DNA of 64,000 nt from Klebsormidium nitens (lineage: Eukaryota > Plantae > Klebsormidiophyceae). The DNA lies in the NCBI GenBank assembly GCA_000708835.1, contig DF237025.1, positions 155,667 through 219,666 on the forward strand, given 5' to 3'. Both the position numbers and the translations under genes were made by a program. A model generated the notes under the pieces. The model was not told the DNA's origin. It worked only from the letters and a program-made list of their open reading frames with translations, and searched no databases. Positions within the stretch are counted from its first letter, which is position 1. Each line of letters begins with the position of its first letter. Of this stretch, positions 1 through 18,002 are shown one piece after another.

Positions 1-1491
1 GTGCTTGCTCCCGTAGCGTGAAGGTACGAAAGGTGATTGCTTGCCTCAGCAGGTATGCTTTGACAGAACGTTCGATTGCGCTAGATCTAGGACATCGACA
101 ACTGGTTGTTATATTGAGAAAGGAAGACAAAAGGATTGCTTGGTACCGATTGGTACCGATCGAAATATGTGTACATCAGCAAGGTTTTGACTTCACCATT
201 AAACAGAAATCTACCCTTTGGAGCTTTGCGAAGCCTCCATGAATCAACGTTGGTGCACAAGATACACAAAACGCCTCACAGCGCCATTGCTGTATAGCGC
301 CAGCGCGTGTGGCCAAGATACGATGATTGTGGTTCACATGTTTGATCGACGGTGAGCTGTGTGCTTGCTAGCTGCTAGTCGAGATCGGATAGAATGATGA
401 CTCCAGTTTGTTAATCGTTGGAATTCTACATACGTGCTCATGTCAGTGCATACGTATCACCAATAGCGCCCCTGAAACTTCACATGCGGCCTTGCTTACT
501 CAAGGTTTATAGGTTATGCATGTATCCGCAAAGCCCGGAGCTAGATCTGGAACATGGTTTCTCTGTGGCCGCTTGTTGTGCACTAGTCGATCAGCATGGA
601 CGCAGATCAATCCTGACATTCTTGGTGACGTATACTTCGATGACACGCGCCCACGCACCGCGAGCTAGTTCATGCACGCTAGGTCCTTTGCTAGCTCATG
701 TTGGATCCTAGTATTGCAATATATATTTCAGAGTCGTTTCTGCTGCTATCAGCATGTACAAGTGCAGTGATCAGATTAGCGTTGACCGACCGTCCTGCAT
801 GCATGACATCCAATACTGTCGGTCAAAATTCGAATCGTGATCAACAGGTCTGGCGAACATGCTATGATGCATTCAAGCTCGTTGCATTCATCCGGCTACC
901 GCAACAAGTCGAGCTCGGACCTAGGATGGCCAGGCAGCCCCACGCTCCATGCAATTGGTGAGCGGGCCTGCCCTACAGACTGTGCACCCCATACGTGCTG
1001 ACCCACCATCAATGGTAAGCTTTGGTCAAAGTCGGGCCCTTAATCTTTTGCAGGACGTACCAGGGGGGACTTTTCCCACTGTTTCAACATGCATTATGAG
1101 GGGCTTTGACATAGAGGATCGAGTGAGGGGCTTTGATATACATGGAAAATCGACAAAGACGGATTTTAGGTTGACATTGATTCAGCAGATCCTTGAGGTT
1201 GTTCAATCGTCAGCAGAGTGTCTACGTAAGTACAACTCTGCTTTCTTAGCAAGCAAATATTGACTGGTTGACCTACTTGCTCCTTATGCGATAATAAGAC
1301 AAGCTCAGCTCGACAAAGCAATAGGCAAAGCGCCAAGGTGGATTGGTAACGATATATATATTGAAGCCCAGTGTACACTACTTATCCTTGCTTTGAATTA
1401 ACTTATGCGGCTCGATCGAGTCGCAAAAGCGATAATCGTCGGCACTAGCCGTTCACTTTGTGAAGTCAAAGAGAGATTGACACGTCAACCA

Positions 1492-4400
1492 TCACCGCTT
1501 CTTTCTCAACTTGGACCGTTCATACGACATGCTCCGGATGACGTACGCTCGGGCCCAGCTCTCTGAGGCGCCTTGCGTCACCAGCGCCTACGGAGGCCAG
1601 AAAATAGCGTATGTTATTATACGAGCAAGAAGAGTAGACAAGAGACCATATCTTCCCCGCAGTCAGCAATTTCCCAGCAGCTTTTCAGAGAAGAGGTTTT
1701 CGAATCTGACCAGGCTTCATGAGTTGAGACAATCCAGTAAGCAGAACCTTCCGAAAAATGCGTCGAGGACACGAGAAGCCCCGCCGGTTTGGGGAGCCAG
1801 TCAAATCTGGGAGCCAGTCAGAGAAACTACTGTAGTCACGAGGTATCATGCCTGTTACACGACCCTCACAAAAACAATGATCTAGGAACAGATTGTTCAG
1901 AGAACAACCTTGTGAGCTTTTGACTAATTCGGTCAGCGAATCAGACAGAAGGAAAACATTCAGCAGAATTTGGAGCAAGGAACGACCCTGCTCACGGCGA
2001 GGAGCATGCCGGCGAGAGCAAAGAGAAATAATGGAACAGGCTGCGCTCGGAAAATAAATGCCGCGCGCTCACCTCAATGAGTTTCTGGACGGCCTCGCTC
2101 TGCTCCTTGGCGGTTTTAGTTAGGTCCACAAATTGCTCACGCACCTCGTGAGTATACGCCTGCACAAAATTAAGCAAATCTGAACAATACGTCCTTTTGA
2201 ACACTGGCGACGCAATGCATCCACATATAATAGGGCCACCTTTTGGACAAAAACTCAAACGCTCGACCTGTATCTACAACTGTCTACTCCTATCATTCCA
2301 CCGTCAACAAGGAGCAATGAGAAAAGCGAGAATGAGGCAAGCAGAAAGAACAGAGCTGAGGGCGACTTACAATTAGCCTTGACTTCAGCTCGGGTGGCAT
2401 ATCTCCATCCGAGCCGTTGTCATTGCTGGGCTGCGGGATCTTGGCGAGCGGTGTCTTTGCTGGTGTGGCCGCCTTTCTAGGACGACCCCGCGGCTTCGGT
2501 GCGGTTGTATCGGGCGTCGAGCTGGCACCAGTCAGCCGCTGCTGAAGGTCTGCGATCTGGCAGCAAAGAAGGTGCCCGGATCAGAACGGTGAAACCAGTG
2601 AAGCTAACAAAGGAAAGCTACAGCTTCTACCGAGCAACCTGCTAAAATTAGTGTAAATTGTAATGTAACGCAGTCAGTCTGCAACTGAGTGAAATTAACG
2701 CTAACAGTGGCGGGTTGCTCGGAGAAGCTGTAGACATGGGCCTCCTCGATTCAGATAGGGGGAGGGCAGAATTACGGTTCAGCGGTTTCGGCGGTTGGGC
2801 TCTGCCAGGGAGGACCGGGACAAGAGCGGTAGACCGTCGTTCCACATGGCGATGTGAAGACAAGTTTCCTTCGAGCATCAAAGGGAGTGCAAAGCAGCGG
2901 ACGGTCCTGAAAGGGCGTCCCTCTGGCCCATCTCGCATATCGAACTGGGTTTGCAATGCGACCTTAGGGTCAATTTGTCATTCTTTGGTTACACCCGCAA
3001 AGAATCAGAAGCTGCTGTTACAAGGCGTCCGCCCGTCCGTTGGCATGAGCGACGTCGAAAAAGAGAACACGTTCGGACACGAAGTTAAATCACCAAAAGC
3101 CTTGCGAAGTGTGACACCCTACTAGCCAGCGGTGCATCTTACTTGGCCGTTCGCCGATCTCTGCGCCTCTGTTGGCCCCTTCTCAGCTGCCTGGATCTCG
3201 CTCCGCAGCTCCGCAATCAGCGCCAAGCTCTGCAATGAAAGCAAAGAAAGTAAGGATGAAGGTTGTCTCTACTCGCTACCTGGCGGATGGGCTGAACAAA
3301 TCAGAACTTGTCCATTACGCCAACGCAATGGGCTGAAGAACTCAGCCTTCGCGCGATCTGTAGGACGAGAAGTACACGCACGGCACTTCCAAAACGGGCT
3401 TTCCTGAAACCCAATTGATTGGCAAAATGTCCACTTCCAGCCGTCAAGAACGTGCAAAAACCTGAAAAAGAAGAAAGTGGTTTCCCCAGACATCGTCCAC
3501 TGGCAATGAGATTCCGTGCCGTCCGAGCGCCGTACCGTGTTCTGGTCGCTCTCGTTGCCCGCGAGCTGCGCCTCGAGCCGCGTCACCAGTGCCAGATGCT
3601 GCTCGCGCTCCTCCGCTAGGCGCGCCAGCTTCGACTCTAACGTGGCGTGCAACGACGCCACCTCCTGCTGTTCGCCGCGCAGGGAAGACTGCACGAGAGA
3701 GGTTTGGATGATTGGTAAAGAAAGTCAAGATTGGCTCTCAAAAATGGCACGCTGCATGCTCGCAGGCCTGAAGTGTTGATTGGGAAACGACAGGGATAGC
3801 CTGCGAAATGTAAGGGCAGCGATGTATGGGTGCGAGCCTGCAGTTATGGGTCGAGAGAGAGACGGGGTGAGCTCAGAAACAAGAGGGGTACATAAAGCAT
3901 GCAACGGGGATACACAAATGTATGCTCTACGGACTGTGTGCAGTCTCCGAATAAGGATCAGAAATAGGGGGAGAAACAAAACGGCGTCATTCTGGAAATG
4001 GACTCAGAGGAAAGGAGGCAGAGACGAAGGAAAAGAAAAGGGCGCCGCCACTTCGTCAACGTTCATCAACATCCCCAGGGGCCCCAGACGGTCACGCTCT
4101 CCTGGAATTGCACTTGGGCACTTACCAGGAGACCATCGAGCCGCGCCACGTCAGCAGCCGCCAGCTCCTTCTTCGGCGGGAGCGCGCCGTCCAACTCCCC
4201 GAGGCGCGCGCGCGTGCTCGCGAGCTGCGCGTCGCCCTCCTGCCGCTCCTCCTCCAGCTGGATCATCCGCGCCTGCAGCGCCGCCACGTCGCCTTTCGCC
4301 GCCGCCTCTAGTTCTCCCACCCGTTTCCGGACGCTTTTCAGCTCCTCGGACGTCCCGTCCTTCTCCGCCTTGAGCATCCGAAGCGTGTCCAACAGGTCGC

Positions 4401-7400
4401 AAACCTCGCGTTCCTTCACTTGCAGACCGGAAGCGTATTCCGCCGTTACTTCTTTCAGCTTCTCCTCGGCGCCCACCGTGACAGCTGTCAGCTGGGCGCG
4501 CAGCCGCTCCGCCTCCGCTTGAGCGCTGTCCTCCTGCTGCCTCAGAGCGGCGACCTCCGCCTGAAGTTCCGCCACTCTAGTTGTCGCCAAAGCCTCCGCC
4601 CCGTCTAGCTTCGCCCGCAGAGCGAGCATCTCCTGCGCGAGCCCCTCGCGCAGTCGCCTCGACTCGTCCAGTTTCCCCGCCACCGCGCTCTTCTCCGCTC
4701 TCTCCCCCCGATCCCTTTCTACGGCACTCTCTCTCAAGTCAGTCCGTTCCCCCGTTACCGTTTCCAATGCTGCCCCGAGCTCTTCGATCGTCTCCTGAGC
4801 CTCTTCGTACGTCACCATGACCTCAGCGACGCGCCCCTCGAGCGCCGTAACCTGCGCCTGCTGCGCTTTGTTCCCCTCGTGCGCTGCCGCTAGCTGCGCC
4901 AGAGCCGCTTCCAACTTTCCGCGCGTCGCATCCATCTCCTTTCTCGCCGCGGAAAGCTCCGCCTCCTTGGACGCCCGCAACGCATCCACCTCTTCCCTCA
5001 GCTTCTTTGCTTTCGCACGCGCCGCCTCGGCTTCTGCGACCAACGTCTTCTTTTCTTTCCCTACACCCTGCAAAGTTCTTTCCACTTCCGCAGCCCTGTC
5101 GCGCGCACCCGCCTCGGACCGCTCTAGCGTCTCCAGACTCTTTCGCAGCGCCGCGAGTTCCGTCCCGAACGCCGCCTCCTGCGCGGCCAGGTCCGCTTTC
5201 GTCTGCACCACTTTCTCCGCCATTTCTACCTTTTGCTCCCGTAACGCGACCAGCTCTTCCTCCAAACTCTTCACCGCTTCGTTCTGCGCGGCAGTCGCTG
5301 ACTCCGCCGCTTTCCGCCCCTCCGAAACCTCCTCCAGCATCGACGTCAAGCGCCGTTCTAAGCTTTCCACTTGGCCCCGCGACTTCGCCTCCGACTCCGC
5401 GACCGCGGCAAGCTCCGTCTCAAGCGCCTGCATCTCTTCGGGGCTGCCGTTCTTCGCGCCCGCGAGCTCCTCGTGGGCCAGCGCGAGCATTTTCGAGATG
5501 TCCTCCTTCTCCGCCTTTATCGTCTCCAAACGCCCGGTCATCAGTTCGATGTGCTCTTCCTTGGCCCGCAGCCGCGCTTCGAAGTCCGCCGACGCGGCCG
5601 CCAGGTCCATTGTCGCGCCCAACTTCACCTCCGCGAGCCGCTTCTCTAGTTCGCCGATCGCGGTCTTCGAGTTCGATTCCGCGGCCACCAGCCCGGCAAT
5701 CCGCGCCTCCAGCTTCGTTACCAAGAGCCCGGCGAGCTTCTCTACCTCCGACAGACGCATCCGCGCTTCCGTCAGGCTCTGCACCGCTTCGCCCCTCTCG
5801 CTTTGCGCACCCTCCAACTGCATTCTGAGCTCCGAGAGCTGCCCCTCCTTGTCCGCGATCGCCCGCTGATACCCCGCCGCATCGCTTACCAGCTTCGCTT
5901 CGAGCAGGTGAATCTCCCCCTGCATGGCTGCTAGTTCCTGCTCGTAGCCTGCCAGGGACGCGTTCACACTGGGCCCGTCCTCCAGTTGCGCTTCCAGCTT
6001 CTTGACCAACTGTCGTGCAGCGCTTTCCGCATTTTGCCACGCTTCCGCCTCCGCTCGCAACGCTTTCATCTCCTCCTTGCGGATTCCGTCCATCGCGGCC
6101 AGCGCCGCCTGCGCTTCCGCCAGCTGGCGCTCCGCGAGACGCCGCTTCTCCCGCGCGCGCTCGAGCTCCCGCGACAGCGCCGCCACGTCCGCGTCCCTCT
6201 TCTCCGCGCTGTCTCTCCCCCGCCGCTCTAGTTCCCCCCACCGCTTTTCCAGCTCGAAAGCCGCTGCTCTTGCCCGCTCATCTTCCAACTGCAGCGACGC
6301 GATCTGAGCCCTCAACCCCTCAACCTCCACCCGCCGGCTCTCTTCCAGCTTCACCAACTTCGCCTCGGCAACACCCACAGCTTCCTCCGCCGCTCTCTTC
6401 TTCCGCTGCACCTCCTCCAACTCCCCCACAAGCGCCTCAATCTGGCCCTTTCTCGCCTCTAGTTCTTTCTCATACCCCGCCACGCGCGCCTCCATCTCGT
6501 CCCGGTGCCGCACCCCCTGCGCCGCCAACTGCTGCACCGCATCCTCTAACTCCGCTTCCAACTGATCGATGTCGTTCCGCGCGTCCTCTTGCGCGTTTTC
6601 CAGCACCGCAACCCGTTCCTTCGCGGCCGCGCGCTGCTCCCGTGCCTCATCTAAGGCGTCTTCCAGATCCTCGATCTGGACCCTCAGGTCGTCCGCTCCG
6701 TGCACTCGCTCCACGTTTTTCAGCTTCGCCTCGAGAGCGTGCTTTTCGGAGGTCAGCGTATCGAGGCTCTTCTCGAGGGCGGCGACGTCGGACTGGGAGC
6801 TGCGAAACGTCCGCTCTAGTTCCTCGCGGGCGGCGGCCAGCTCCGCTGCGGCCGCTTCGTCGACGCTGTTCCGGAGCTGCTCGAGGTCGTATTGGGCTTG
6901 GGCCTGTGTGTAAGGAGAGGCATATTCAGGACTCAATCTGTACCGCATCTGCTTTTCATATTGAGATCAAACCATGCTAGGATATCACAAGACTACGAGG
7001 CTGCAGAGACGTTTTGAAGACGAGCCTATCCCCTGGCCGAATGATTTTTCTCCAAGCCACACATCTCAAGACAAGAAGCAACCTGGATTCCTCGGCGAGT
7101 TTCGTATGGCAGTGTTTCGCTGGCAATGGATGCGGACCACTCAGTGGCCCCTGGTAATCATGAAGTTCTACAGTCCTGCCACCGCGAATAGAGGCCCTCA
7201 TGATGGTGTCTTTCTCCACGAACTTCACACGAGTTGCCGTTCTCTTTTGTTTACATATCTGGCCACCTTGCCATTCGCCCGTGCTTCGACCTATTCCCTG
7301 TGTTTCACCGACTCACGAACGTTAGAATCGAAGTCGTTGTTGGCAACTCCGCTTTCAGAAGCCGCGCAGTCAAGTCGATCGCAACCGCTCCATGCACAAG

Positions 7401-10400
7401 CCCTCACCTGAGCCCTCTCCAGGTATCGCTCCGCCTCGTCAAGCCGCTTTCGCGCGAGTTCGAGCGCGGACACCACCTCCTCCTTCTCGCCCTCCAGCGT
7501 TTGGACACGCTCCTGCAGCGTCCGGTTGTCCGACAGCGTGACGTTCGCGATGTCCTTGACCAGGCGCAGCTCGCTCAGAACCTCCTCTTGCACCTCCTCC
7601 AGGGTTGACACGTGGCCGGAGAGCCGCTTGTTCTCCGCCATGATTGCAGCCACACGTGACTTGAGCTGCGCATGGGGAGAGTGGCGCGTGAGACGGGCAA
7701 AGAGGGTGCACAATGGAGGGCAACTATTGAAGATGGGATCGGTGCGAGCTGTGGCTACGAATCCCGAACCTGTCAGAATGGTTCTCGACGGATTTCGGCG
7801 ACTGATGTCTGGCGACTGAAGCTGCGACACGAGTCGAGAAAGTGGTTGACGAGTCGGGTGAGAAGGTAGCAGGTCCTGGAGGAAGAGAGTTTGTCCTTCT
7901 CAAGACCAACAGCTCGCTGCGTGCCATGCGACTGATCTTGAGACCCTCAACCTCTGCCTTTCAGTTCGGTGTTAAAGGTCAGCACAATCACCATTTAACA
8001 AATAAATCACAACGCAGGTCGAACGGCCGCCCTTACCTCTGTGTTGAGATTCTCCATGTTGCTTCTGTCTGCCGACACACTCTCCAGCTGTCCCGTGGTG
8101 TTCTCCAGGCGGGCGTTGAGCGATGCAATGCTGGCAAGGGCGGCGTCCCGCTCGACGCGCAGCGCTTGGGTGGAGCTCGTGAGGCGCGCCAGCTCAGCAA
8201 GCGAGGAGGCCTCCTTCTCAGCATACAGGGCCACAGCCTGTGGGTAGGTGAGTGCGTAAGCGGCACGCCACGGAAGGGGGGCACGGGTGTGTTTCGACGC
8301 AGGGTGAAGATTGCCGTTCTCGCAGCTGCGGTCGGGTGACTTCGGGGATAGGGGACGTGAGTTGTATACACGACCAGCTTTCAAGGCCTCGCTCACCGTG
8401 GGGGAAGGCATAATGCGCGAGGATAAAAAAGACGAGTAGCGATGGACTTTGAAGAAGCTCGGTTCCTGATTGAAGGCCTTCTTAGTTCTAACTAGAAAAA
8501 GTGCAGACGATAATGAACCGGAGGCAGGCCTGGTTGAGAGCTGCAAAATGGACTCGGGTATCAAAGAAAGAAACGAGGCATGATAAGCGACTGCTAAGGT
8601 GTGCAGGGAGGCTTGTCCAATCTGTGAGTATCAATACTTTTGGGCAGGTTCGAAGAAGGATCGTGCATTTATCAACAGGACGGTCATCTTCGCGAAGGAC
8701 GCACCAATTCTAGTCATGAAACATCAGCTGCCTTAATATACGTGTGCGGTATCTGCAGATCTGAGACTCAAGCAGGAAGTGACGCTCACCTGTTTCAACT
8801 TGGCAACACGAGTTCGCTCCTCATCCACATCCTTCCTTAGCACCGCATTGATCCGCCGGGCCTGCATAAGAGTGCATGTCGGACGAATCAGCGAAAGCTG
8901 CGATTGTCAAAGCTGAATACCTGAAAATGGTTGCGGAATGCGACTCTGACACAGCTGACACGTTTCATTCTAGGTTTGATCCAGGTAAAGACCAAACCCG
9001 CCTTTTGAGTGTTGAACGATCGTTGTACAAAGTGGTAAGAGACTGCGTTGGAAAGAAGCGAGGCCCCTTCGACTGCGATACAATAACAACAAGCATCTGT
9101 GTGCCAAGTGATTCCTCTGCGACTGCCGCTGTGTGTCAGGCCCAAATTCACTGTCTTTCCAGAGTAAACGTACCTCCCATCCACAACAACATAAGACAAG
9201 TTGCATATAAACGACTCGTTTCTAAGCATTGCTTCAGGGGGGGAACAACCCTTATTACATAAAGAAACAAGTACTTGTCAATAAAAGATAGGCAACCAAG
9301 CGCACGGCAAACAAATGCACATATCCTCTCACTGAAGAAGGAAGAAAAGGTGCACCGTCGCCATCTCTTTCTGCTCACCTTGCTCTCGCGCTCGAGAATA
9401 AAGCTCATGAGGGAGGTGACAAGCGTCTGCTTCAGTAGGGTGGCCTTCGAGTTCTCGGATTGAGAGCTCTGGCTAACAGGGACCTGGGAGTCTAGCAGCG
9501 AGCGCAGTTGGACCTGCGAATGGGCCAAAGACAGTCACAGGGTGTTTTGGCTGTTAACCACATTCGGTTACGGGCTGGTTCGAAGCTGGTTAACTGTCCA
9601 ATCACCAGACTCGAGCAGTAACCAGGTTTAAGCGTGGCTATAACGCGGTTATTGGTCAAAGAACCAGACTGGAGTTTGGTTATCGAAACTGGTTAGCAGC
9701 CAAACCTTCCTGTGAGTATTGAGACATTCTTTGCGGGGCATTGACCACTGTCAGAGATGCAGACTGTAGCCAGACCACTGAACGGAAGGACAAATAGCTG
9801 AGAAGAAAAAGTATCGTTTTGTCAAGAGAACAGTGGAGCTAGGGCAAGAAAGCAAGGTGCAAAACAGGAAGGGGTAACAAACCGAACAGGGCAAGAAGTG
9901 CACCGTGTAAGGAGGCGGTTTGATTTGATGTTTGAGATGCTGACAGTAGAAGAGACACGGCATACCTCCAGCATGCGCGGCCCCACTTCTTCGCCTTCTT
10001 CCAGGTCCTGCCCTCCGACCTTCTCCACGATTCCCTCGACCAGCGACTCGAGGCGGGCTTTGCCTGCAATTGGAGACACACACTTAAGGGATGGTCGCCA
10101 GGAGTGTGCTGCCTTTCTGGGAGGTTCTGCAGCGACGTCTGCAATAGCCGTAGGCCTTCACACCGACCAGGATGAGGAGAGATGAAGAATGGACAGGATT
10201 GGTGCATACCGGCTGTCGTCAAATGAGCCCCAAAAGCTTGCACTAATGTCAACCTGTCCGAAAGCAACAAGGCCGGACAATAAAGCACACAGCTCTCCTT
10301 CCAGATCATCAACTGATCTGCAGAAGTAATGGAACATAGGCCCAAAGATGGAACAAAAGCTGGGGGCTCGTTGGGGCGGCAGCCCCCCCGGTGTCAAAGC

Positions 10401-11661
10401 TTAGAAAGGGGCAACAGGATCCTCACCGGAGTCTGCTGCCAAATATTTTGACACGAACTGGGTGATTAAAAGCACCCCCAGGAGCGACTCCAGTTGGGGC
10501 AGGAACGGAACGGCCTCCACTTTCTGCAGCACCAAACAGAGGCCAAGAACGTCTGTGAGTCCCTCACGTCCTTTCCATGCTATCTTGTACTGCTTACATG
10601 TTAGTGAAAACTAGACCTAATGTTTAATAGGTAAATGATAGCCATCTTGAGGCACTTAAAAACAGTAGTTGTTTGTAACCTGATACATGACACACTCTGC
10701 ATTGGCCGCTACACATGCCGTAGAAGGGCATCTCACCCTGATGACTTCGGTTGTCACGCTCGCAAAAATGTACGCCGAGATTGACAATGCAAGCGCTGCC
10801 CCAAGCCGGTATGCCTGCACGCCAATCGAATCACAGGTTATGAGAATTGCATTCTTACAATGAGAACTCAGCCATCCATGCTTACTGATGATACATTCTT
10901 GACAGACTGCTAGCACTAAGCACAAAGAGAGTCTCTAACCCCAGTCCCTTTAAAGAAAGAGGGGCATTTCTGCAAGTATGCATCCACAAGCACAATCCAG
11001 TTGCAGGGACAGACTGACCGGAGGGAAAGTGACGTCGCTGGGAAAGAACGTTTGTACGGTTGGAACCCATGTTTCGAAAGTCTTCTTCGGAACCTCTGGC
11101 TCCTCTCGCTTGGGTAATCTGCAGACGGCAACATAACATGGTTGATGAAGATTCTTCTGCTCCGCAAGAGAATGTTCCTTCACAGAGATGCTTCCCGCGA
11201 AGTGGTGGTGATTCATAGCTCAACTTCGCTTCCATTCTAGTCTACATATCCAATCCGTTCTCGATAAGCAGGCCTGCTGGACGAGACTATGCAGCCAAGC
11301 AATGCCTCTCAGATGGTTGACGCTCTTCTCAGTGTACACAAATGCGTGTGATGTAGATTTCGCCGACCTACACAATCTGTGCAGAGTTCCAGTGCATCTT
11401 TGGAGAATTAGCTTACTGTTTCCTTTTCTCCAGCATATTCCTTTTCTCCACCATGTTCTTTTTCTCCACCATGTTCTTTTTCTCCGCCGCATTCTTCTGA
11501 CCGAACAGCGACTTGAAGCCTGCTGCCCGGACACTCCTGGACCTTAGCTTAGATGCTCGACGCGTCCTCACGAGGGCCCCGTGTGGCAAACGGCCTATGG
11601 CAACACATTTATTGAAAGAATCAATCTGTGCACTACTGGGTAGTGCCAAATGGCCGTTCAT
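1492..11661 (-). CDS. Multi-exon gene for a ~1,556-aa protein: putative plastid transit peptide + CURT1/CAAD-like membrane domain + ~1,300-aa coiled coil + AT-hook + basic C-terminus
   Basis: In-frame GT-AG exon chain: 11661-11417, 11118-11019, 10814-10737, 10523-10427, 10063-9966, 9513-9379, 8861-8790, 8237-8037, 7665-7408, 6903-4126, 3688-3536, 3229-3143, 2556-2371, 2159-2073, 1587-1492 (stop TGA); total 4,671 nt. The 960-aa ORF 4066..6948 is the largest exon (E/A/L/K/R-rich heptads). The start ATG at 11661 is uncertain. Confidence 0.75.
9536..9714. mobile_element. 179-bp MITE with CACAG...CTGTG termini and 3-bp TSD (AGT); CACTA/CMC-like
   Basis: Left end CACAGGGTGTTTTGGCTGTTAACCA vs reverse complement of right end CACAGGAAGGTTTGGCTGCTAACCA (21/25 identical). 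AGT at 9533-9535 and 9715-9717. Internal AACCA/TGGTT repeats. Lies in an intron. Confidence 0.65.
11417..11495 (-). repeat. Short coding tandem repeat (18-bp unit) encoding EKKNMV-like repeats
   Basis: Plus strand shows ttttctccaccatgttct repeated with variants; minus strand translates AEKKNMVEKKNMVEKRNMLEKRKQ. Confidence 0.8.
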
Positions 11662-13473
11662 TTAAGATAGTGTGAATCTGGTGTACTGTGAGGCTGCAGA
11701 GTAGGAGAGACTTTGCATGTACGGTAGATTGTGCGCTGCAAGTGAGCGTCTAAACGGATTCCCAAGCCAGGCCTTGGCGACCGATAGACTGGTGACAACT
11801 ACACATTGAAATCGACCGACATGCAGATTTGTACATACAACACTTCAGCGCAGCGCATTGGTGGCAAGGTTGGCACAAAATCCACATCTGACTACATACT
11901 TAATTTGAAAGGTGACATTTCAAATCAGAAGATTAAACATTTCAGACACTACCTTCTAACACAGACAGACATATCTGTTGGCTGCTGCGGCCAAGGGATC
12001 CCAAAAAATCAGCTAGTCACAGGCTTGCATCAATGAACCAGCGACATTCAGGTTCTAAGTCACATCACGCCTTGAGCAAGCCACATTGCTGGAAAACCAT
12101 AAAAGTCGCGTTGGGGTCTTCCTGAAGCAAGCAAAGTTCAACTACTTTTCTCTAACATTAGCACCTATAGGTAGAATGCACAAGGACCTCTGAACCTTTG
12201 GTCAGCGTTGAAGTGTAGATAACGCACCTGGATGAAAACCGGCCTTCAGCTGGTGTAAGACATCTGGTGGGCCGATCGCCAGAAAATTCTGCTTTGTGGC
12301 AACCAGGCTGCAGTCCATTTCAATGAGTGCTTGTCCAAAGCCCAAGAGCTTGGACGCTCTCAGGAGGGAAGCAGCCATGGCTTCTGTCCTAATGACCATT
12401 AATGCCCCTGAGGTCCCCGCATTGACTCTGCTTTCTGCACCTTCGTGGCGCTCCCGCGTCGATCCTCGCAGTATTTTGCCAGGTGAAATGCTCTCGCCAT
12501 AGGACAATTCTGCCGAATCGCAGCGCCTGCTTAGCTCCTCTCACATCACCGTGTTAAACTTAAAGTGGTCTCTGCCACGACTGCGGAAGGTGGTTCATCA
12601 ATGATCCTCCAGGTGGCAGGTGCCACTCACGACTCGGACTCGTCAGCCTGCCAAGCCTGGCCTGACTCCGTCCGAGGAGGACTCGGAGTCGGCGTCTGAG
12701 TCGGAGCTGGGCCTCTCCGAGTCAGCCTCAGCACTGCACTGGCAGGCTCAGGCTCACGCAAATTGGCGGGAATTCAAGGGTGGAAGAGCTGTTTGTCCCG
12801 CCATAACCGTAGACGGTTTTACTCCGATAAAGTTGGGATTTTGACTGTTGATGTTGCCCCTCATTCTATATCGCTCCGCAAATGGTGATCTATAATACTG
12901 GATATGTGCATAAGTTCAGTCCTCATGTGTTAAAGTTAAAGGAGTAGCCAGTTGCCAGATTGGGACCTCCTACATATCAATACGAGTGCTTATGAGCCCT
13001 TCATTGTAATTTTTCTTGGTGCATTTTAATCGAGCTGGGTTGCAGGCAATAAGCAGGTCCGGTCGCCCTGAATGGCAATGGCTATGATTGTTCCGTACAT
13101 AGCGATCTGACGGCTGATAGGTGTGCACGACTTGGACAGCTCTCGAAAACCGGCAGCCGACAACCCTGCCGCTCATGAGTCCGGCAACTCTTCCCCCTTT
13201 AAATTTGTGGGATTCATCATTTAAACTCATGTGCAAGATAGGCGCCCGGGAGACGGGTTAACTTACGGTAGTACAGTGTGGTGATATGGTTGTAACTGTA
13301 CTACCGTTTTAAGTGTTAAGCGCCCGGGCAAGTCGATGACTGCATGGACGTTTAAAAGATTGGATTAAAGTAGGGGCTGGCCCAAAGCGTCACGTTCTAG
13401 CTGGACGAGGCTGCTACCTAGCGGTAAGGGTACAATTGAAGGGATAACGCACCATTACCATGGGATCGGATAG

Positions 13474-13925: not shown

Positions 13926-15469
13926 TAGGTATGCCAACTGGAAGAAGCGTGCTGAGCACACGTCTCTCCTCTTCCAAGTTCTGTCGTCACGGTCACCGAC
14001 ATGGTCTGCGGCTGAGAAAGAACCCATTGCACTGGAACTTGAAGTTGAACCAGGATTGACAATCCTAAGCTGTGCGGGGTCCGACGTTGTCGCGCTCCGT
14101 TTCAGACGGCCTACCACCACTTATCAAGGGCGACGAAGGCAGCATATCTTTCTACCGAGAAAGTAACAAATCAAAGAGCTACTCCCGGCCGCCAAGCGAG
14201 ACTAGCTTGGCAGCTGTTGCCGAGGTCAAGGCGCGAGTTGACAAGCTAACTCGTTGTTGTACTCCATGTTTTAACTGTGGCTGGCCCTTTAGAGGATGTG
14301 GTGGCGCTTGACCAGAAGGCAGCGTTCCCTGGTTGCAGGCGGCCCTTGCAACATTGGGGAATGCTGAGTTCTTGAAGGGGACTACATCGGTACCTATGGC
14401 TTCTGCTTTGATGCAGAAGTCCTGCTTGCGGGGGCAAGCGGTTATAGACACCAAATGCCGGGCCGCGTCGCAGCAACTTCTGTGGCCGGTAGGCACCTCA
14501 GGGGAGCGGCAGTTGAGGGTTGCCAGCTCTGGTGAGTGCACCACTAGATGCGTTGTGATATATGCCAGTATAAGGCCGGGAACTTCAAAAGTTCAGAGAC
14601 GGCATTGCTCTTTGCAATGTCGTAGAATCTTGTGGTAGTGGCTCCGGCGCCCTAAGAGCTCTTCGCGTTTGTGCTGGAACTGCAATCTCCATCCATGTTT
14701 CCTGCGGTTCTGATTGTATTGATTCAAACGTTGCTTCCTCGAAAAAGTCCAGCAGTCACAGACATTCACATTGGGGGCCGCCACGAGGTCACGGTTGTCG
14801 GTTGTGGAGTCGTTCGGTCTCGTTGCTTGCTTTTCTGAAATGACGAGTGAAGGGAGACAGCGAAGAAGGCCACAATCATCTTGGTCAGATGCGCTGCTCA
14901 GTTTACCAAACCTGAGGTTTAGTCTGATGGTTGGCCTGGCAGCATTTCGTACCTTCCATTCTTCATGGTGCATACATAAAATCTATGCAAGATTTCAATA
15001 TGGAGATTCAAAGTCCATCACAAAACGGATGCTCGGCATTGCAAAGCAGTGCTTTGAATCTCAATAATAGCGGCAATTGTAGTTGCTGCTGGTCTGTTTA
15101 CCTCATCCAACTGATCTTTGTCGTCGGATGAAGGTTCAAGTCAATCACGTCAACGTCCAACTGCCTCCCTAAAGTTCCGCCCCCGCTCTACAAAACCCTT
15201 CTTTGAGACAGACTGATCAGAGGAAACACTATGCAGAGCATGCTTTTCTCGGCAAGCGTGTTGGGGCTGGAGCGTCGGAAAGCAGAAGGGGCGTCCGGCC
15301 CTGTGGATTCAAGCGGCCGCTTGTTGAGAAGAAAGCGCCTGTTGCAAGACTTGGCACACCGTAAGCATAGCCTGCTAACATACACACACTCTGAGCCCAG
15401 TTTCGAATTCGATGCTTATTCCAGTAATTCAGCAAGGAAGGGCGAGAAGTAGGATCGGTGTGCTTTACC

Positions 15470-18002
15470 ATGGCAATCAGCAATCAGCTGATAAGCTACG
15501 ACCACCTTACTGAAGTACTCGGCATCTGCGTCCATGCCCAAGCACCAAGCTTTCAGCATGGGACTCCCAGCGGATGTAACTTTCGGCACCTTTTCACAAT
15601 GTTGGGCGTTTTTTGCAGCTCAAGGGGTTCAGACAAGAACCGAATCACCTGCACCAGCCAGTTCACCGCGGTGACAGACAATGACCATGTGGTTTGTCCA
15701 GAAGTCCAAACGGATGCAGCAACATTGCAGTCCAGCTCCGCAGACTTGTCACCTAGAAACCAAGCCTTCGCACTCCTCCTAGCAAAGCTCCCAAAACTCC
15801 TCTGCATAGCAGCCCTCTGCTCGGTCCTCCTCCTCCCAAGCCGTCCAGCCTGGGCCGCAAACGGCGCCACCGCGACTCTCGCCCGGCCCGCACGGTTCGC
15901 CCGCTTTAGTATCGTAGCCTCTCTCGTGAGCATAAAAGAGGCGTTCAGAGTAGCTTCCGCTGGGGAGCTGTTGGCAAGTGCGTGGACGGGCCTAGTTGCG
16001 GGGTGCCTGCACACACTGACGGGGCCGGATCATCTAGCCGCGCTCGCGCCAATGTCGATCGGGCGAACGCGGCTGCAGAGTGCGTGGATGGGGGCGCTCT
16101 GGGGGTGCGGCCACGATGCGGGGCAGCTGCTGTTCGGGCTGCTGTTCCTGCTGCTCAAGGAGCGGCTGCACATGGACCTACTGTCGGTGAGTGCTGGCTC
16201 AGTTACCGAGCACGTTGGTCTGGTCGAGTGAGTCGTTGGCTGCGAGGCCCAACTTTCTTGTCGATTTATCTATCTGAGGACAACATGCCCAGTCATTGTT
16301 GCAAGTCTGGTCGACAGAGAGAGAGGCGACCAGGATAGAATCAGCTCAAGGGAAACCGTTTCGCTTGGTTGCTGGGACTCAAGAGTCAGTTGATGATGAT
16401 GCACCAGTTATCAAAAAGCGGACTGAGGCTTGACTCCTGGTCGTTATGCTTCCCCTTTGGCATCTGCGAAGATCCTGCGAAGATCAGAAGAAGGAGGATT
16501 CGCTACAGGGTTTCAAGCTCATTTCAGAAGTCTCAAAACTGTTCTGGCTCTGGCTCATATAGACTCCTACTCCGACAGTCCCTTCGTCGCTTTTACTATC
16601 TCTACCGGTCTTGTAAGTCGCTCACTCCAGATCTCCATGTTTCCAGCAATGGAGCGGGGTGGTCATCGGCGTGACCCTCTGCGGCATCGGGGCGCTCGGG
16701 TTGTACGAGTCGCGACAGCTGAGCGCGTCGATACACGAGCCGCCTCCGGAAGAACGCCCGCTGACGCCAGCCTACGCTGGCGCGTCTACAAGCGGCGCCT
16801 CCGAGGAGTACCGACCCGAAGAGACCGCGACAGATGCGCCGAGGGGAACTGCGTCTTCGAGCAAGCCATTTGGGGTGGCGACCTTCATAACAGGCGAGAT
16901 GCCCTGGCCCTTATGTCTTACCTTGCTTCAATATTCGTATTTTGATTGTGGAGAGTAGGAGACATACTTGATCACCGACTTGTTGAAACTTCATAACAGG
17001 CGAGATGCCCTGGCCCTCATGCCTTCCTTGCTTCAATATTTGTGTTTTGATTTTGGAACAGTAGGAGACATATTTGATTACCAACTTGTCGAAACCATGT
17101 AGAAGCAAGCAAAATGGAGAGACGGTTCTTCACCAAGCGAGTATTAAATTCAAGGGAATGTGTGGACACCTATGGGAATAGGCTCATCGGCATCACTCGT
17201 TTTTTAGGACGTCCTCAAGAACTCTGTACACTGCACCTGGGATGCATCTCTTCTTTCAAAGTCAAACCGTTCGCTGATTGTTCTTCCGGGCTCGTGTCTG
17301 ACCTTGTCGCGCGCGTGTTCTTGCAGGCATCTTCCACGGCTTCCAGCCCGACGCTCTCATCATGATCCTTCCCGCTCTCGCACTCCCGTCCAAGCTGGCG
17401 GGGCTGTCGTTCCTCGTAACCTTCCTACTCGGAACCATTCTCGCGATGGGGAGCTACACGGCGTTCATCGGGGCGTCCTGCGAAGTGCTCGGGGAGCAGG
17501 TCCCCGGGGTGAGGCTCCGGTTGTCAACCTCCCCCCCGTTCTTTCCCTTCTCTGAATGCTTTTTGAAGGTTTGAGACGTTCGTCGTGATGAAAAACATAT
17601 CTGTTACAAATGTGAAACAATTTCCAAATTTCTTGGACGATGGAGAGGAGTTCGGCGGAGCTGTGGAGAATTTAGTTGTACTCGTGCTTGCTACTTCGTA
17701 TACGCCTGTTCGCTTGTAGAGCTTTTATAGTTTGGACTCGGGCGATCGGATAAATTGTTTTTGGTATAGCGGACACTCCATGTTCGGCCACTGGGGGTGT
17801 GCATACCTCTTCTTGAGAATGCAGAGCCGATTGGTAATCAATTGCTTGTTTGAAACTCAGTGACTGGTCGGGTCTGTCTGAACAAATTTGTATCGTCCTT
17901 TCGCAGATCAACGAAAAGCTCTCGCAAGTTTCTTCGATGATTTCGATATTTGTTGGGGCCGCATTGATTTCTTCGAACGCATTCGGCTTCAAAATCCTGT
18001 AA
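15470..18002 (+). CDS. CGF1/CGF2: Plastid membrane protein of the CGF / UreH-like / NiCoT-related (DsbD_2) family
   Basis: Exons ~15470-16186, ~16648-16893, ~17328-17510, 17907-18002. Motifs AGCLHTLTGPDHLAALAP, GALWGCGHDAGQ, TFITGIFHGFQPDALIMILPALALPS, and C-terminal INEKLSQVSSMISIFVGAALISSNAFGFKIL*, as remembered for Arabidopsis CGF1/2. Long N-terminal transit-peptide-like leader. Confidence 0.85.
16883..17094 (+). repeat. 106-bp tandem duplication spanning the exon 2 GC donor of the CGF-like gene
   Basis: Both units (16883-16988, 16989-17094) begin cttcataacaggcgagatgccctggccct and remain alignable throughout. Confidence 0.9.

What the first reader, a model, noticed from the sequence alone, without database searches (positions are those of the whole stretch)
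1492..11661. CURT1/CAAD membrane-curvature domain fused to a giant coiled coil ending in an AT-hook: candidate thylakoid-to-nucleoid tether
Seen: four small exons (11118-9966) splice in phase to ...AYRLGAALALSISAYIFASVTTEVIRKVEAVPFLPQLESLLGVLLITQFVSKYLAADSGKARLESLVEGIVEKVGG. The last helix sits in an exon (10063-9966) that has no stop and ends in a GT donor; phase-0 exons then lead into ~1,300 aa of coiled coil and a KPRGRPRK motif. Known: CURT1/CAAD has two TM helices linked by I..(V/I)P.LP...EL.G....WF..RYL plus an amphipathic helix. It is normally a ~15-kDa stand-alone thylakoid protein in plants or is appended to cyanobacterial aminoacyl-tRNA synthetases; CURT1B is also called pTAC8; MFP1 is a separate thylakoid-anchored coiled-coil DNA-binding protein. 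Inference: a lineage-specific scaffold that anchors at curved thylakoid margins and reaches DNA (or starch/pyrenoid) through a long rod. I know of no described protein with this architecture. A gene finder relying on the long ORF would miss the N-terminal domain.
Basis: partly seen in the sequence, partly recalled or inferred. Interest (0 to 1): 0.85.

Follow-up and report, generated by a model that had tools for sequence, protein, structure and literature searches.

The report
Thylakoid CAAD anchor with giant rod
A green alga related to land plants makes one large protein that joins a CURT1/CAAD-type thylakoid membrane anchor to a rod about 180 nm long and a small new end domain; relatives exist in other streptophyte algae, and I found no paper describing them.

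Summary
The region holds one minus-strand gene of 16 exons (CDS 12378..1492; 1,584 aa, about 174 kDa).

- **One transcript.** Single RNA-derived contigs of about 5.3 kb from four runs in four studies carry every junction from the CAAD exons into the 2.8-kb coiled-coil exon.
- **5' end.** A further exon at about 12.66-12.23 kb supplies a transit-peptide-like start (MAAS...).
- **Anchor.** The spliced N-terminus passes Pfam CAAD (33.5 bits, cut-off 30.7).
- **Rod.** About 1,200 residues show heptad periodicity.
- **Relatives.** Six proteins of 559-818 aa share three parts: CAAD, a conserved segment just after the membrane anchor, and a coiled coil. Two are from Spirogloea and Mesotaenium; four are from unlabelled transcriptomes. 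Two Klebsormidium-like genomic contigs carry the giant version.
- **C-terminal domain.** It is a confidently predicted three-helix bundle with no clear known fold.
- **AT-hook.** It scores just under Pfam's cut-off and occurs only in this species and its closest relative, so the nucleoid-tether reading is weak.
- **MFP1.** Arabidopsis MFP1 has a similar layout, but its membrane anchor shows no sequence similarity.

I detected no land-plant member and found no paper on this family. The scan's notes hold no earlier finding of it.

The parts
12228..12664 (-). Exon 1: 5' leader plus the start of the CDS (ATG 12378, MAAS...; an alternative in-frame ATG lies at 12399). The 5' limit is approximate.
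   Evidence: RNA contigs run 316-437 nt beyond 11596, and the loose-end letters match 12228 and upward. The donor is GT at 12227. MAAS is conserved in L007.
11417..11594 (-). Exon 2: the rest of the transit-peptide-like presequence, with the conserved VRAAGFK motif, and a Lys-rich repeat.
   Evidence: Junction 11118/11417 and the break at 11596. The motif is conserved in L007 and L008. An 18-nt repeat occurs about 4 times.
11019..11118 (-). Exon 3: the segment just before the first membrane helix (..KKTFETWVPTVQTFF..).
   Evidence: Junctions 10814/11019 and 11118/11417. 85% aa identity in L007, Ka/Ks 0.05.
10737..10814 (-). Exon 4: first CAAD transmembrane helix.
   Evidence: Hydropathy peak at residues 152-175, Pfam CAAD, junctions.
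10427..10523 (-). Exon 5: the CAAD loop (AVPFLPQ) and second transmembrane helix.
   Evidence: Pfam CAAD, hydropathy, junctions. 81% identity in L007 and 59% in L008.
9966..10063 (-). Exon 6: the CAAD C-terminal amphipathic helix (GKARLESLVEGIVEKV) and an acidic linker.
   Evidence: Pfam CAAD reaches profile position 84 of 85. Junctions 10063/10427 and 9513/9966. Ka/Ks 0.06.
8790..9513 (-). Exons 7 (9513-9379) and 8 (8861-8790): the family-specific segment just after the membrane anchor (..MLEVQLRSLLD.., ..FILERESKARRINAVLRKD..).
   Evidence: Conserved in all six distant homologues. 91-93% identity in L007. Junctions.
7408..8237 (-). Exons 9 (8237-8037) and 10 (7665-7408): the start of the coiled coil.
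   Evidence: Junctions. Heptad periodicity z 3.6-8.1.
4126..6903 (-). Exon 11: 926 aa of coiled-coil rod.
   Evidence: Junction 6903/7408, heptad periodicity, only sub-threshold generic coiled-coil Pfam hits. 76% identity in L007 and 49% in L008.
3143..3688 (-). Exons 12 (3688-3536) and 13 (3229-3143): the end of the rod.
   Evidence: GT-AG borders and phase 0. Collinear conservation islands in L007 and L008. Contig-length arithmetic. No reads were laid directly on these exons.
2371..2556 (-). Exon 14: a Pro/Ser/Thr-rich basic linker with the AT-hook-like KPRGRPRK (2496..2473), then the start of the C-terminal domain.
   Evidence: Pfam AT_hook 16.8 bits against a 17.4 cut-off. RGRP is kept in L007 only.
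1492..2159 (-). Exons 15 (2159-2073) and 16 (1587-1492, stop TGA 1494-1492). With the end of exon 14 they form the conserved C-terminal three-helix domain.
   Evidence: Conserved in all six homologues. AlphaFold2 mean pLDDT 90.3. Ka/Ks 0.04 for exon 15.
1158..1491 (-). 3' UTR, about 310-335 nt (inferred).
   Evidence: The contigs extend 2,690-2,717 nt below 5900, which equals 1,774 + 609 coding nt plus about 310-335 nt. blastn conservation with L007 reaches down to 1231.

Best explanation
**What is shown.** This is one expressed nuclear gene of a Klebsormidium-type streptophyte alga. The organism name comes from the scan's other notes and fits my data, but I did not verify it. The gene encodes a 1,584-aa protein built from these parts, in order:
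1. a presequence of about 80-140 aa that looks like a plastid transit peptide;
2. a CAAD/CURT1-type hairpin of two transmembrane helices plus an amphipathic helix;
3. a conserved segment of about 80 aa just after the membrane anchor;
4. a coiled-coil rod of about 1,200 aa, roughly 180 nm if fully extended;
5. a Pro/Ser/Thr-rich basic linker, which in this species carries one AT-hook-like motif;
6. a conserved three-helix C-terminal domain of about 65 aa.

The gene structure, its expression, the domain content and its conservation are shown by tool results.

**What is inferred.** The CAAD hairpin inserts into the thylakoid membrane with both ends on the stromal side, as in CURT1 and in the cyanobacterial CAAD synthetases. 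The rod dimerises and projects into the stroma. The C-terminal domain binds a stromal or membrane target. The protein would then hold that target at a set distance from the thylakoid, with the distance depending on rod length.

That layout is the same as MFP1 of land plants, but it uses a membrane anchor with no detectable sequence similarity to MFP1's. The target is unknown. DNA is only one candidate.
For: - **One transcript.** Contigs in four runs from four studies carry all nine junctions between 11417 and 6903. Their lengths also fit the 5' exon and the five 3' exons. Word shares of 0.21-0.41 match the exon fraction.
- **CAAD.** 33.5 bits, above the 30.7 cut-off. All six homologues also hit CAAD at 18.8-36.8 bits; two of them exceed the cut-off. 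There are two hydropathy peaks.
- **Rod.** Heptad periodicity with z up to 8.7 over residues 281-1484.
- **Family.** phmmer of the N-terminal 193 aa against 1.84 billion representatives gave six long proteins (E 1.5e-24 to 6.6e-7). Two are from Spirogloea muscicola and Mesotaenium endlicherianum. All six share the segment after the anchor and the C-terminal domain.
- **Orthologous loci.** L007 and L008 are collinear with the window exon by exon.
- **Selection.** Ka/Ks against L007 is 0.25 overall, 0.04-0.13 in the anchor exons, the segment after the anchor and C-domain exon 15, 0.29 in C-domain exon 16, and 0.29-0.54 in the rod.
- **C-terminal domain.** It folds with mean pLDDT 90.3 and pTM 0.75.
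[quoted passage not shown] MFP1 is a thylakoid-anchored coiled coil that faces the stroma (PMC10801857).
Against: - No localisation data exist and I had no transit-peptide predictor. Plastid targeting rests on composition (net charge +10, three acidic residues in the first 78) and on the CAAD domain.
- The single-sequence AlphaFold2 model of the N-terminal region is poor (pLDDT 47.6).
- Exons 12-16 were not covered by laid reads. They rest on phase, conservation and contig length.
- The target of the C-terminal domain is unknown. Fold matches are at noise level (Foldseek E above 1, VIA Z at most 6.3).
- Dimerisation and extension of the rod are assumed.
- The CAAD score is only about 3 bits above the cut-off.
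Confidence: 0.6

Rival explanations
1. One reading: a thylakoid-to-nucleoid tether. The CAAD anchors at curved thylakoid margins and the AT-hook at the far end of the rod binds AT-rich plastid DNA.
For: KPRGRPRK has the R-G-R-P core flanked by basic residues and scores 16.8 bits to Pfam AT_hook. RGRP is retained in L007 inside an otherwise fast-changing linker. The C-terminal domain is basic (pI 9.0-10.0) in six of seven members, and homeodomains appear among its weak fold matches. MFP1, which has the same layout, is reported to bind nucleoids (PMC6747931, citing Jeong et al. 2003).
Against: The AT-hook score is below Pfam's 17.4 cut-off, and there is only one hook. It is absent from L008 and from all six distant homologues, so it cannot be the family's conserved function. 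The homeodomain matches are at the noise level for small helical bundles (notes). One member's C-terminal domain is neutral (pI 6.9).
Confidence: 0.15
2. A starch or pyrenoid organiser. The rod would position starch-granule initiation or pyrenoid components relative to the thylakoids. That is the role now assigned to MFP1 in Arabidopsis, and the family would have been lost when land plants adopted MFP1.
For: MFP1's thylakoid anchorage sets where starch granules start (PMC10801857). Every labelled member found comes from a streptophyte alga, and no land-plant protein was detected at E up to 1e-3. That these algae have pyrenoids is my own knowledge, not tested here.
Against: There is no carbohydrate-binding module and no Rubisco-binding motif. 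Pfam finds only CAAD in the homologues. Absence from land plants rests on a single-sequence search. Four members have no taxon label.
Confidence: 0.2
3. An artefact: two neighbouring genes, a small CURT1-like gene and a coiled-coil gene, wrongly joined by contig assembly or read-through.
For: A minor contig retains intron 5 (10192-10422, depth 3.1). If translated it would stop 8 codons after exon 5. Logan contigs cannot by themselves prove a single molecule.
Against: All 15 introns are GT-AG and in phase, with no stop in 1,584 codons. The same contig spans every junction in four independent studies. Six homologues from independent transcriptomes and genomes have the same N-to-C architecture in one ORF. 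L007 and L008 are collinear with the window.
Confidence: 0.02
4. Not a plastid protein: the CAAD-like hairpin would anchor a long coiled coil to another membrane such as the ER or the nuclear envelope, as was first thought for MFP1.
For: Targeting was not tested. The CAAD score is modest.
Against: Every characterised CAAD/CURT1 protein is a thylakoid protein (PMC4893482). All family members carry an N-terminal extension of 45-135 aa before the hairpin. A VRAAGFK motif of the stromal-processing-site type is conserved in the three Klebsormidium-like genes.
Confidence: 0.05

Closest known systems
CURT1A-D (plant CURVATURE THYLAKOID 1) and cyanobacterial CurT; Pfam CAAD PF14159
   Same: The same domain: two transmembrane helices joined by a short (V/I)P(L/F)LP loop, followed by an amphipathic helix. 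It passes the Pfam cut-off. An N-terminal presequence comes before it.
   Different: CURT1 proteins are small stand-alone proteins of about 100-170 aa (my own knowledge). Here the domain makes up about 5% of a 174-kDa protein and is followed by a conserved segment, a 1,200-aa rod and a new C-terminal domain. Canonical CURT1s did not appear among the phmmer hits at E up to 1e-3, so this is a divergent CAAD subtype. Curvature induction and margin location are untested.
Cyanobacterial CAAD-containing aminoacyl-tRNA synthetases (ValRS, IleRS, LeuRS, GluRS, ArgRS, MetRS, CysRS)
   Same: CAAD is used as a portable thylakoid-anchoring module fused to a soluble part on the cytoplasmic or stromal side (PMC4893482).
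   Different: In those enzymes CAAD is inserted into, or appended to, an enzyme, and only in cyanobacteria. That paper states that recruitment is seen specifically by the synthetases and that no such fusions exist in chloroplasts. Here the partner is a structural rod in a eukaryote, and CAAD lies at the N-terminus.
[quoted passage not shown]
   Same: The layout and presumed topology: transit peptide, thylakoid membrane anchor, and a long coiled coil facing the stroma that positions other components, namely nucleoids and PTST2/starch initiation (PMC10801857, PMC6747931).
   Different: The MFP1 anchor is a twin-arginine signal plus one transmembrane segment. It has no CAAD hit and no similarity to this N-terminus (BLASTP E 13). 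Neither the segment after the anchor nor the C-terminal domain was seen in the part of the MFP1 sequence available to me. I therefore treat it as an analogue, not a demonstrated homologue. MFP1 is reported as 726 aa (my own knowledge).
AT-hook DNA-binding motif (Pfam PF02178)
   Same: An R-G-R-P core with flanking Lys/Arg/Pro (KPRGRPRK).
   Different: It scores 16.8 bits against a 17.4 cut-off, occurs as a single copy, and is conserved only in the closest relative.

Membership tests
CAAD / CURT1 (PF14159) | A profile match above Pfam's gathering score | tested here: met
   33.5 bits against 30.7, E 3.9e-8, profile positions 15-84 of 85. The homologues score 18.8-36.8 bits.
CAAD / CURT1 (PF14159) | Two transmembrane helices joined by a short Pro-containing loop, followed by an amphipathic or coiled-coil helix | tested here: met
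   Hydropathy peaks at residues 152-175 and 178-205. The loop reads AVPFLPQ. The single-sequence AlphaFold2 model has helices 33-60, 67-86 and 93-107, at low confidence.
CAAD / CURT1 (PF14159) | CURT1 proper: a small stand-alone protein | tested here: not met
   1,584 aa encoded by a single transcript.
CAAD / CURT1 (PF14159) | Thylakoid location (grana margins), oligomerisation and membrane bending | not testable with these tools
   This needs localisation, fractionation and liposome assays.
CAAD / CURT1 (PF14159) | A plastid transit peptide | tested here: inconclusive
   Composition only: net charge +10 and three acidic residues in the first 78 aa, plus a conserved VRAAGFK motif. No predictor was available.
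MFP1 | Sequence similarity to the MFP1 N-terminal anchor (twin-arginine signal plus one transmembrane segment) | tested here: not met
   No CAAD hit in MFP1 residues about 55-170. BLASTP E 13 against this N-terminus. There is no RR motif before the first membrane helix here.
MFP1 | A thylakoid anchor followed by a long stromal coiled coil | tested here: met
   Met at the level of architecture only. The topology is inferred.
MFP1 | DNA binding and PTST2 recruitment by the coiled-coil or C-terminal part | not testable with these tools
   Needs biochemistry.
AT-hook (PF02178) | A profile match above the gathering score | tested here: not met
   16.8 bits (16.0 in a second construct) against 17.4.
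AT-hook (PF02178) | The R-G-R-P core conserved among orthologues | tested here: not met
   Kept in L007 only. Absent from L008 and from P0001-P0005 and P0007.
Homeodomain-like three-helix DNA-binding fold (considered for the C-terminal domain) | A structural match clearly above background | tested here: inconclusive
   Best Foldseek E is 1.4 (WUS homeodomain, TM 0.46). VIA Z is 5-6.3, mixed with unrelated helical proteins. There is no sequence match in the PDB or Pfam.

The most novel reading that the evidence does not exclude
This family is the streptophyte-algal thylakoid scaffold that organises stromal contents (nucleoids, starch or pyrenoid) at a distance set by rod length. In land plants it would have been replaced by MFP1, which has a different anchor, as a case of non-orthologous displacement. 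It would also be the first known recruitment of the CAAD anchor by a protein other than a synthetase, and the first such fusion in a eukaryote. Its C-terminal three-helix domain would be a new cargo-binding module.
Probability: 0.25. Interest if true: 0.75.

Novelty: new variant of a known kind. Interest (0 to 1): 0.6.

Why it matters
CAAD/CURT1 is known in two forms: a small protein that shapes thylakoid membranes, and an anchor captured by cyanobacterial tRNA synthetases. A conserved eukaryotic family in which the same anchor carries a rod of 45-180 nm and a dedicated end domain suggests a new role. [quoted passage not shown]

This gives a concrete candidate for how chloroplast interiors were organised before land plants used MFP1. 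It also supplies a new small domain whose binding partner can be sought directly.

Tried and rejected
1. **Word-index protein searches failed.** A search with the 926-aa exon found nothing at E up to 1e-10. The family alignment and the N-terminal region of P0001 each returned only P0001 itself. In some searches the scoring was limited to the 8,000 candidates sharing most words, and I take coiled-coil words to have swamped the index. These blanks say little.
2. **MFP1 orthology rejected for the anchor**. Only about the first 400 aa of MFP1 were available from the paper's supplement, so its C-terminus was not compared.
3. **Atlas searches gave nothing.** The ESM Atlas feature search on the N-terminal and C-terminal parts of P0001 scored 0.79 or less, which is noise. 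The fold search in 'atlas' failed three times because the machine did not answer.
4. **No other family match.** NCBIfam and Pfam on the homologues gave only CAAD and sub-threshold SMC/Rad50-type coiled-coil noise.
5. **PDB sequence search** with the C-domain profile returned only designed helical proteins at E above 0.2.
6. **The tree is unresolved.** A tree of nine members resolved only the clade of three Klebsormidium-like genes, so the four unlabelled members could not be placed.
7. **Run accessions** were found in no paper.
8. **Intron 6.** No tRNA, Rfam family or repeat explains the contigs with loose ends at 9536 and 9564.


Full report
**1. Gene model**

Reading the minus strand and assembling candidate exons in a script gave 16 exons. 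All have GT-AG introns of 204-633 nt. All phases fit, and there is no stop codon until the TGA at 1494-1492. The exons are:

| Exon | Window coordinates |
|---|---|
| 1 | 12399/12378-12228 |
| 2 | 11594-11417 |
| 3 | 11118-11019 |
| 4 | 10814-10737 |
| 5 | 10523-10427 |
| 6 | 10063-9966 |
| 7 | 9513-9379 |
| 8 | 8861-8790 |
| 9 | 8237-8037 |
| 10 | 7665-7408 |
| 11 | 6903-4126 |
| 12 | 3688-3536 |
| 13 | 3229-3143 |
| 14 | 2556-2371 |
| 15 | 2159-2073 |
| 16 | 1587-1492 |

Its ATG at 11661 is not.

**2. Transcript evidence**

Twenty public runs from eight studies hold 0.21-0.26 of the sampled words of 6800-11700. That is the share expected if only the exons are present.

Laying four of these runs (four studies, two organism labels) on 5900-11800 showed one contig of 5,256-5,360 nt per run. 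Each contig carries all nine junctions: 6903/7408, 7665/8037, 8237/8790, 8861/9379, 9513/9966, 10063/10427, 10523/10737, 10814/11019 and 11118/11417. Every skipped stretch has CT..AC ends on the plus strand, which is GT..AG on the gene's strand, and there are no mismatches. The CAAD exons and the coiled coil are therefore on one assembled transcript.

The contigs leave the genomic sequence at 11596. Their next letters match the end of an upstream exon at 12228, where the sequence reads ..KAGFHP followed by a GT donor. The contigs run 316-437 nt further, which places the transcription start near 12.54-12.66 kb.

In the related contig L007 the only usable start codon is the ATG of MAAS... I therefore take 12378 as the start, giving 1,584 aa and 173.8 kDa.

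Below 5900 the contigs extend 2,690-2,717 nt. This equals the rest of exon 11 (1,774 nt), exons 12-16 (609 nt) and a UTR of about 310-335 nt. If all five 3' introns (2,025 nt in total) were retained, the lengths would not fit. Word shares of 0.26-0.41 for 1150-4125 agree with this.

A minor contig that retains intron 5 (10192-10422) has depth 3.1, against 52.3 for the spliced form in X1. If translated it would end 8 codons after exon 5.

**3. Domains**

- **CAAD.** The spliced N-terminal peptide hits Pfam CAAD at 33.5 bits against a cut-off of 30.7, E 3.9e-8, over profile positions 15-84 of 85. There are two hydrophobic segments at residues 152-175 and 178-205 of the 1,591-aa numbering. They flank the loop AVPFLPQ, and the helix GKARLESLVEGIVEKV follows.
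- **Rod.** From residue about 281 to 1484, hydrophobic residues show a 3.5-residue periodicity with z up to 8.7 against shuffles. This stretch has only four prolines. At 0.1485 nm per residue that corresponds to about 180 nm. Pfam gives only sub-threshold generic coiled-coil hits there.
- **AT-hook.** KPRGRPRK at 2496..2473 scores 16.8 bits against a 17.4 cut-off.

**4. Relatives**

A phmmer search with 193 aa of the spliced N-terminus (the pre-membrane segment, CAAD and the following 85 aa) against 1.84 billion cluster representatives found eight proteins at E up to 1e-3. Six of them are long:

| Protein | Length (aa) | Source |
|---|---|---|
| P0001 | 769 | Spirogloea muscicola SM000324S12583 |
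| P0003 | 741 | Mesotaenium endlicherianum ME000098S10422 |
| P0002 | 559 | RNA contigs of three runs |
| P0004 | 698 | RNA contigs of further runs |
| P0005 | 818 | Unlabelled Trinity transcriptome |
| P0007 | 662 | Unlabelled Trinity transcriptome |

All six hit CAAD at 18.8-36.8 bits. All six share the same layout:
- an N-terminal extension;
- CAAD, with ..GG(E/D)GRAR(L/I)ES.. after the second membrane helix;
- the motifs ..PSMLDVQLR.LVDE.. and ..FV..RE.K.RRIN.VLRKD..;
- a coiled coil of variable length;
- a C-terminal block, ..EL.AY...VR.Q(F/Y)VD..KP.KEQ...ALV..G....WA..YV.RSM..

That last block is exactly what window exons 14-16 encode, which independently supports the 3' exons.

The two short hits are gene-caller fragments on genomic contigs of close relatives.
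- **L007** (17.5 kb) is collinear with all 16 exons at 45-94% amino-acid identity, while its introns do not align.
- **L008/L009** (a JGI metagenome) carries a third, more distant copy at 49-76% identity in the main exons, also with an exon of about 910-950 aa.

Ka/Ks between the window and L007 is 0.25 overall. It is 0.04-0.13 in the CAAD exons, the segment after the anchor and C-domain exon 15. C-domain exon 16 is at 0.29. The rod exons are at 0.29-0.54.

A tree resolves only the clade of three Klebsormidium-like genes. No land-plant, chlorophyte-labelled or bacterial protein reached E 1e-3. This was a single-sequence search, so absence elsewhere is not proven.

**5. The C-terminal domain**

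With a seven-row alignment, AlphaFold2 gives mean pLDDT 90.3 and pTM 0.75. The model has three helices (residues 8-25, 36-48 and 53-74 of the construct), with the conserved D..KP.KEQ loop between helices 1 and 2.

- Foldseek against the PDB finds nothing better than E 1.4.
- VIA-align's best Z values are 5-6.3 and mix homeodomains with unrelated helical proteins. By the tool's own calibration, that is background for small helical bundles.
- There is no Pfam or PDB sequence match.
- The domain is basic (pI 9.0-10.0) in six of seven members and neutral in one.

**6. The AT-hook is not a family feature**

RGRP is kept in L007, within ..PRLRGRP... It is absent from L008 and from all six distant homologues, although several of them have a Pro/Ser/Thr-rich and sometimes basic linker at that position.

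**7. Comparison with MFP1 and CAAD in the literature**

According to PMC10801857, MFP1 has a transit peptide, a twin-arginine signal, one short transmembrane domain and a C-terminal coiled coil facing the stroma, and its thylakoid anchorage sets where starch granules initiate. Its nucleoid binding is cited in PMC6747931.

I took the Arabidopsis N-terminal sequence from that paper's dataset. It has no CAAD hit and no similarity to the window's N-terminus (E 13). MFP1 is therefore an architectural analogue.

[quoted passage not shown] It states that recruitment of CAAD is seen specifically in aminoacyl-tRNA synthetases and that such fusions do not exist in chloroplasts. Full-text searches for MFP1+CAAD, for CAAD/CURT1+coiled-coil+fusion, and for CURT1/CAAD with pyrenoid or the algal names found no description of this family.

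**8. Organism**

Other follow-up notes of this scan call the genome Klebsormidium nitens. My data fit a streptophyte alga: the nearest labelled relatives are Zygnematophyceae, and the two organism labels with identical RNA contigs would suit the nitens/flaccidum renaming. I did not verify the species.

No protein of this species containing either the N-terminus or exon 11 appeared in the collections searched. The full-length product seems to be missing from them. I could not inspect the official annotation.

**9. Interpretation**

- **Shown:** one expressed, conserved gene under purifying selection, with CAAD, a conserved segment after the anchor, a long heptad-repeat rod and a conserved folded C-terminal domain.
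- **Inferred from the known behaviour of CAAD/CURT1:** insertion into the thylakoid with both ends in the stroma, so that the rod projects into the stroma.
- **Inferred from the architecture and the MFP1 analogy:** a tether or scaffold whose reach is set by rod length. The rod is about 1,200 aa in Klebsormidium-like algae and about 300-500 aa in the others.
- **Unknown:** the ligand. DNA is possible in this species, through the single hook and the basic domain, but it is not supported as the family's function.

No operator restriction came into play.

Noticed in passing
window 12400-12546 (minus strand): The 5' leader carried by the RNA contigs holds upstream ORFs. One is a minimal ATG-TGA at 12546. 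Another has 33 codons and starts at 12500. Its TAA stop overlaps the in-frame ATG at 12399 (TAATG), 21 nt upstream of the likely start at 12378. The leader does not align with L007.
   Followed up: partly
window 11420-11496: An 18-nt tandem repeat of about 4 copies (88-93% matches) inside exon 2 encodes the Lys-rich ..KKNMVEKKNMVEKRNMLEK.. stretch between the presequence and the CAAD. The tblastn alignment of L007 to exon 2 stops at the start of this stretch.
   Followed up: partly
window 10192-10422: A low-depth contig (3.1 against 52.3) lies wholly inside intron 5. It may be unspliced RNA or a minor retained-intron isoform. If translated, it would give a truncated CAAD protein lacking the amphipathic helix.
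   Followed up: partly
window 9536-9600 (intron 6): In runs X5 and X8, short contigs with loose ends at 9536 and 9564 match a piece of intron 6. That piece contains a B-box-like GGTTCGAA. No tRNA, Rfam family or in-window repeat was found, so it may be a dispersed element expressed from elsewhere in the genome.
   Followed up: partly
P0003 (Mesotaenium endlicherianum, 741 aa): Its rod is built from about seven or eight near-identical repeats of roughly 45 aa (..ALAEQATQLKQKEEE..LEEAKQAD..). Rod length in this family can therefore change by internal duplication.
   Followed up: no
window 15458-16231 (plus strand): The upstream neighbour on the other strand has a 257-aa ORF with several hydrophobic segments and a ..GPDHLAALAP..GCGHD.. 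motif. It looks like a metal-transporter-type membrane protein and was not examined.
   Followed up: no
L008 7027-7353 and L009 1591-1917: In the metagenomic relative, the gene upstream of the CAAD gene has a weak ESSS (NDUFB11-like) Pfam hit. I did not compare synteny with the window.
   Followed up: no
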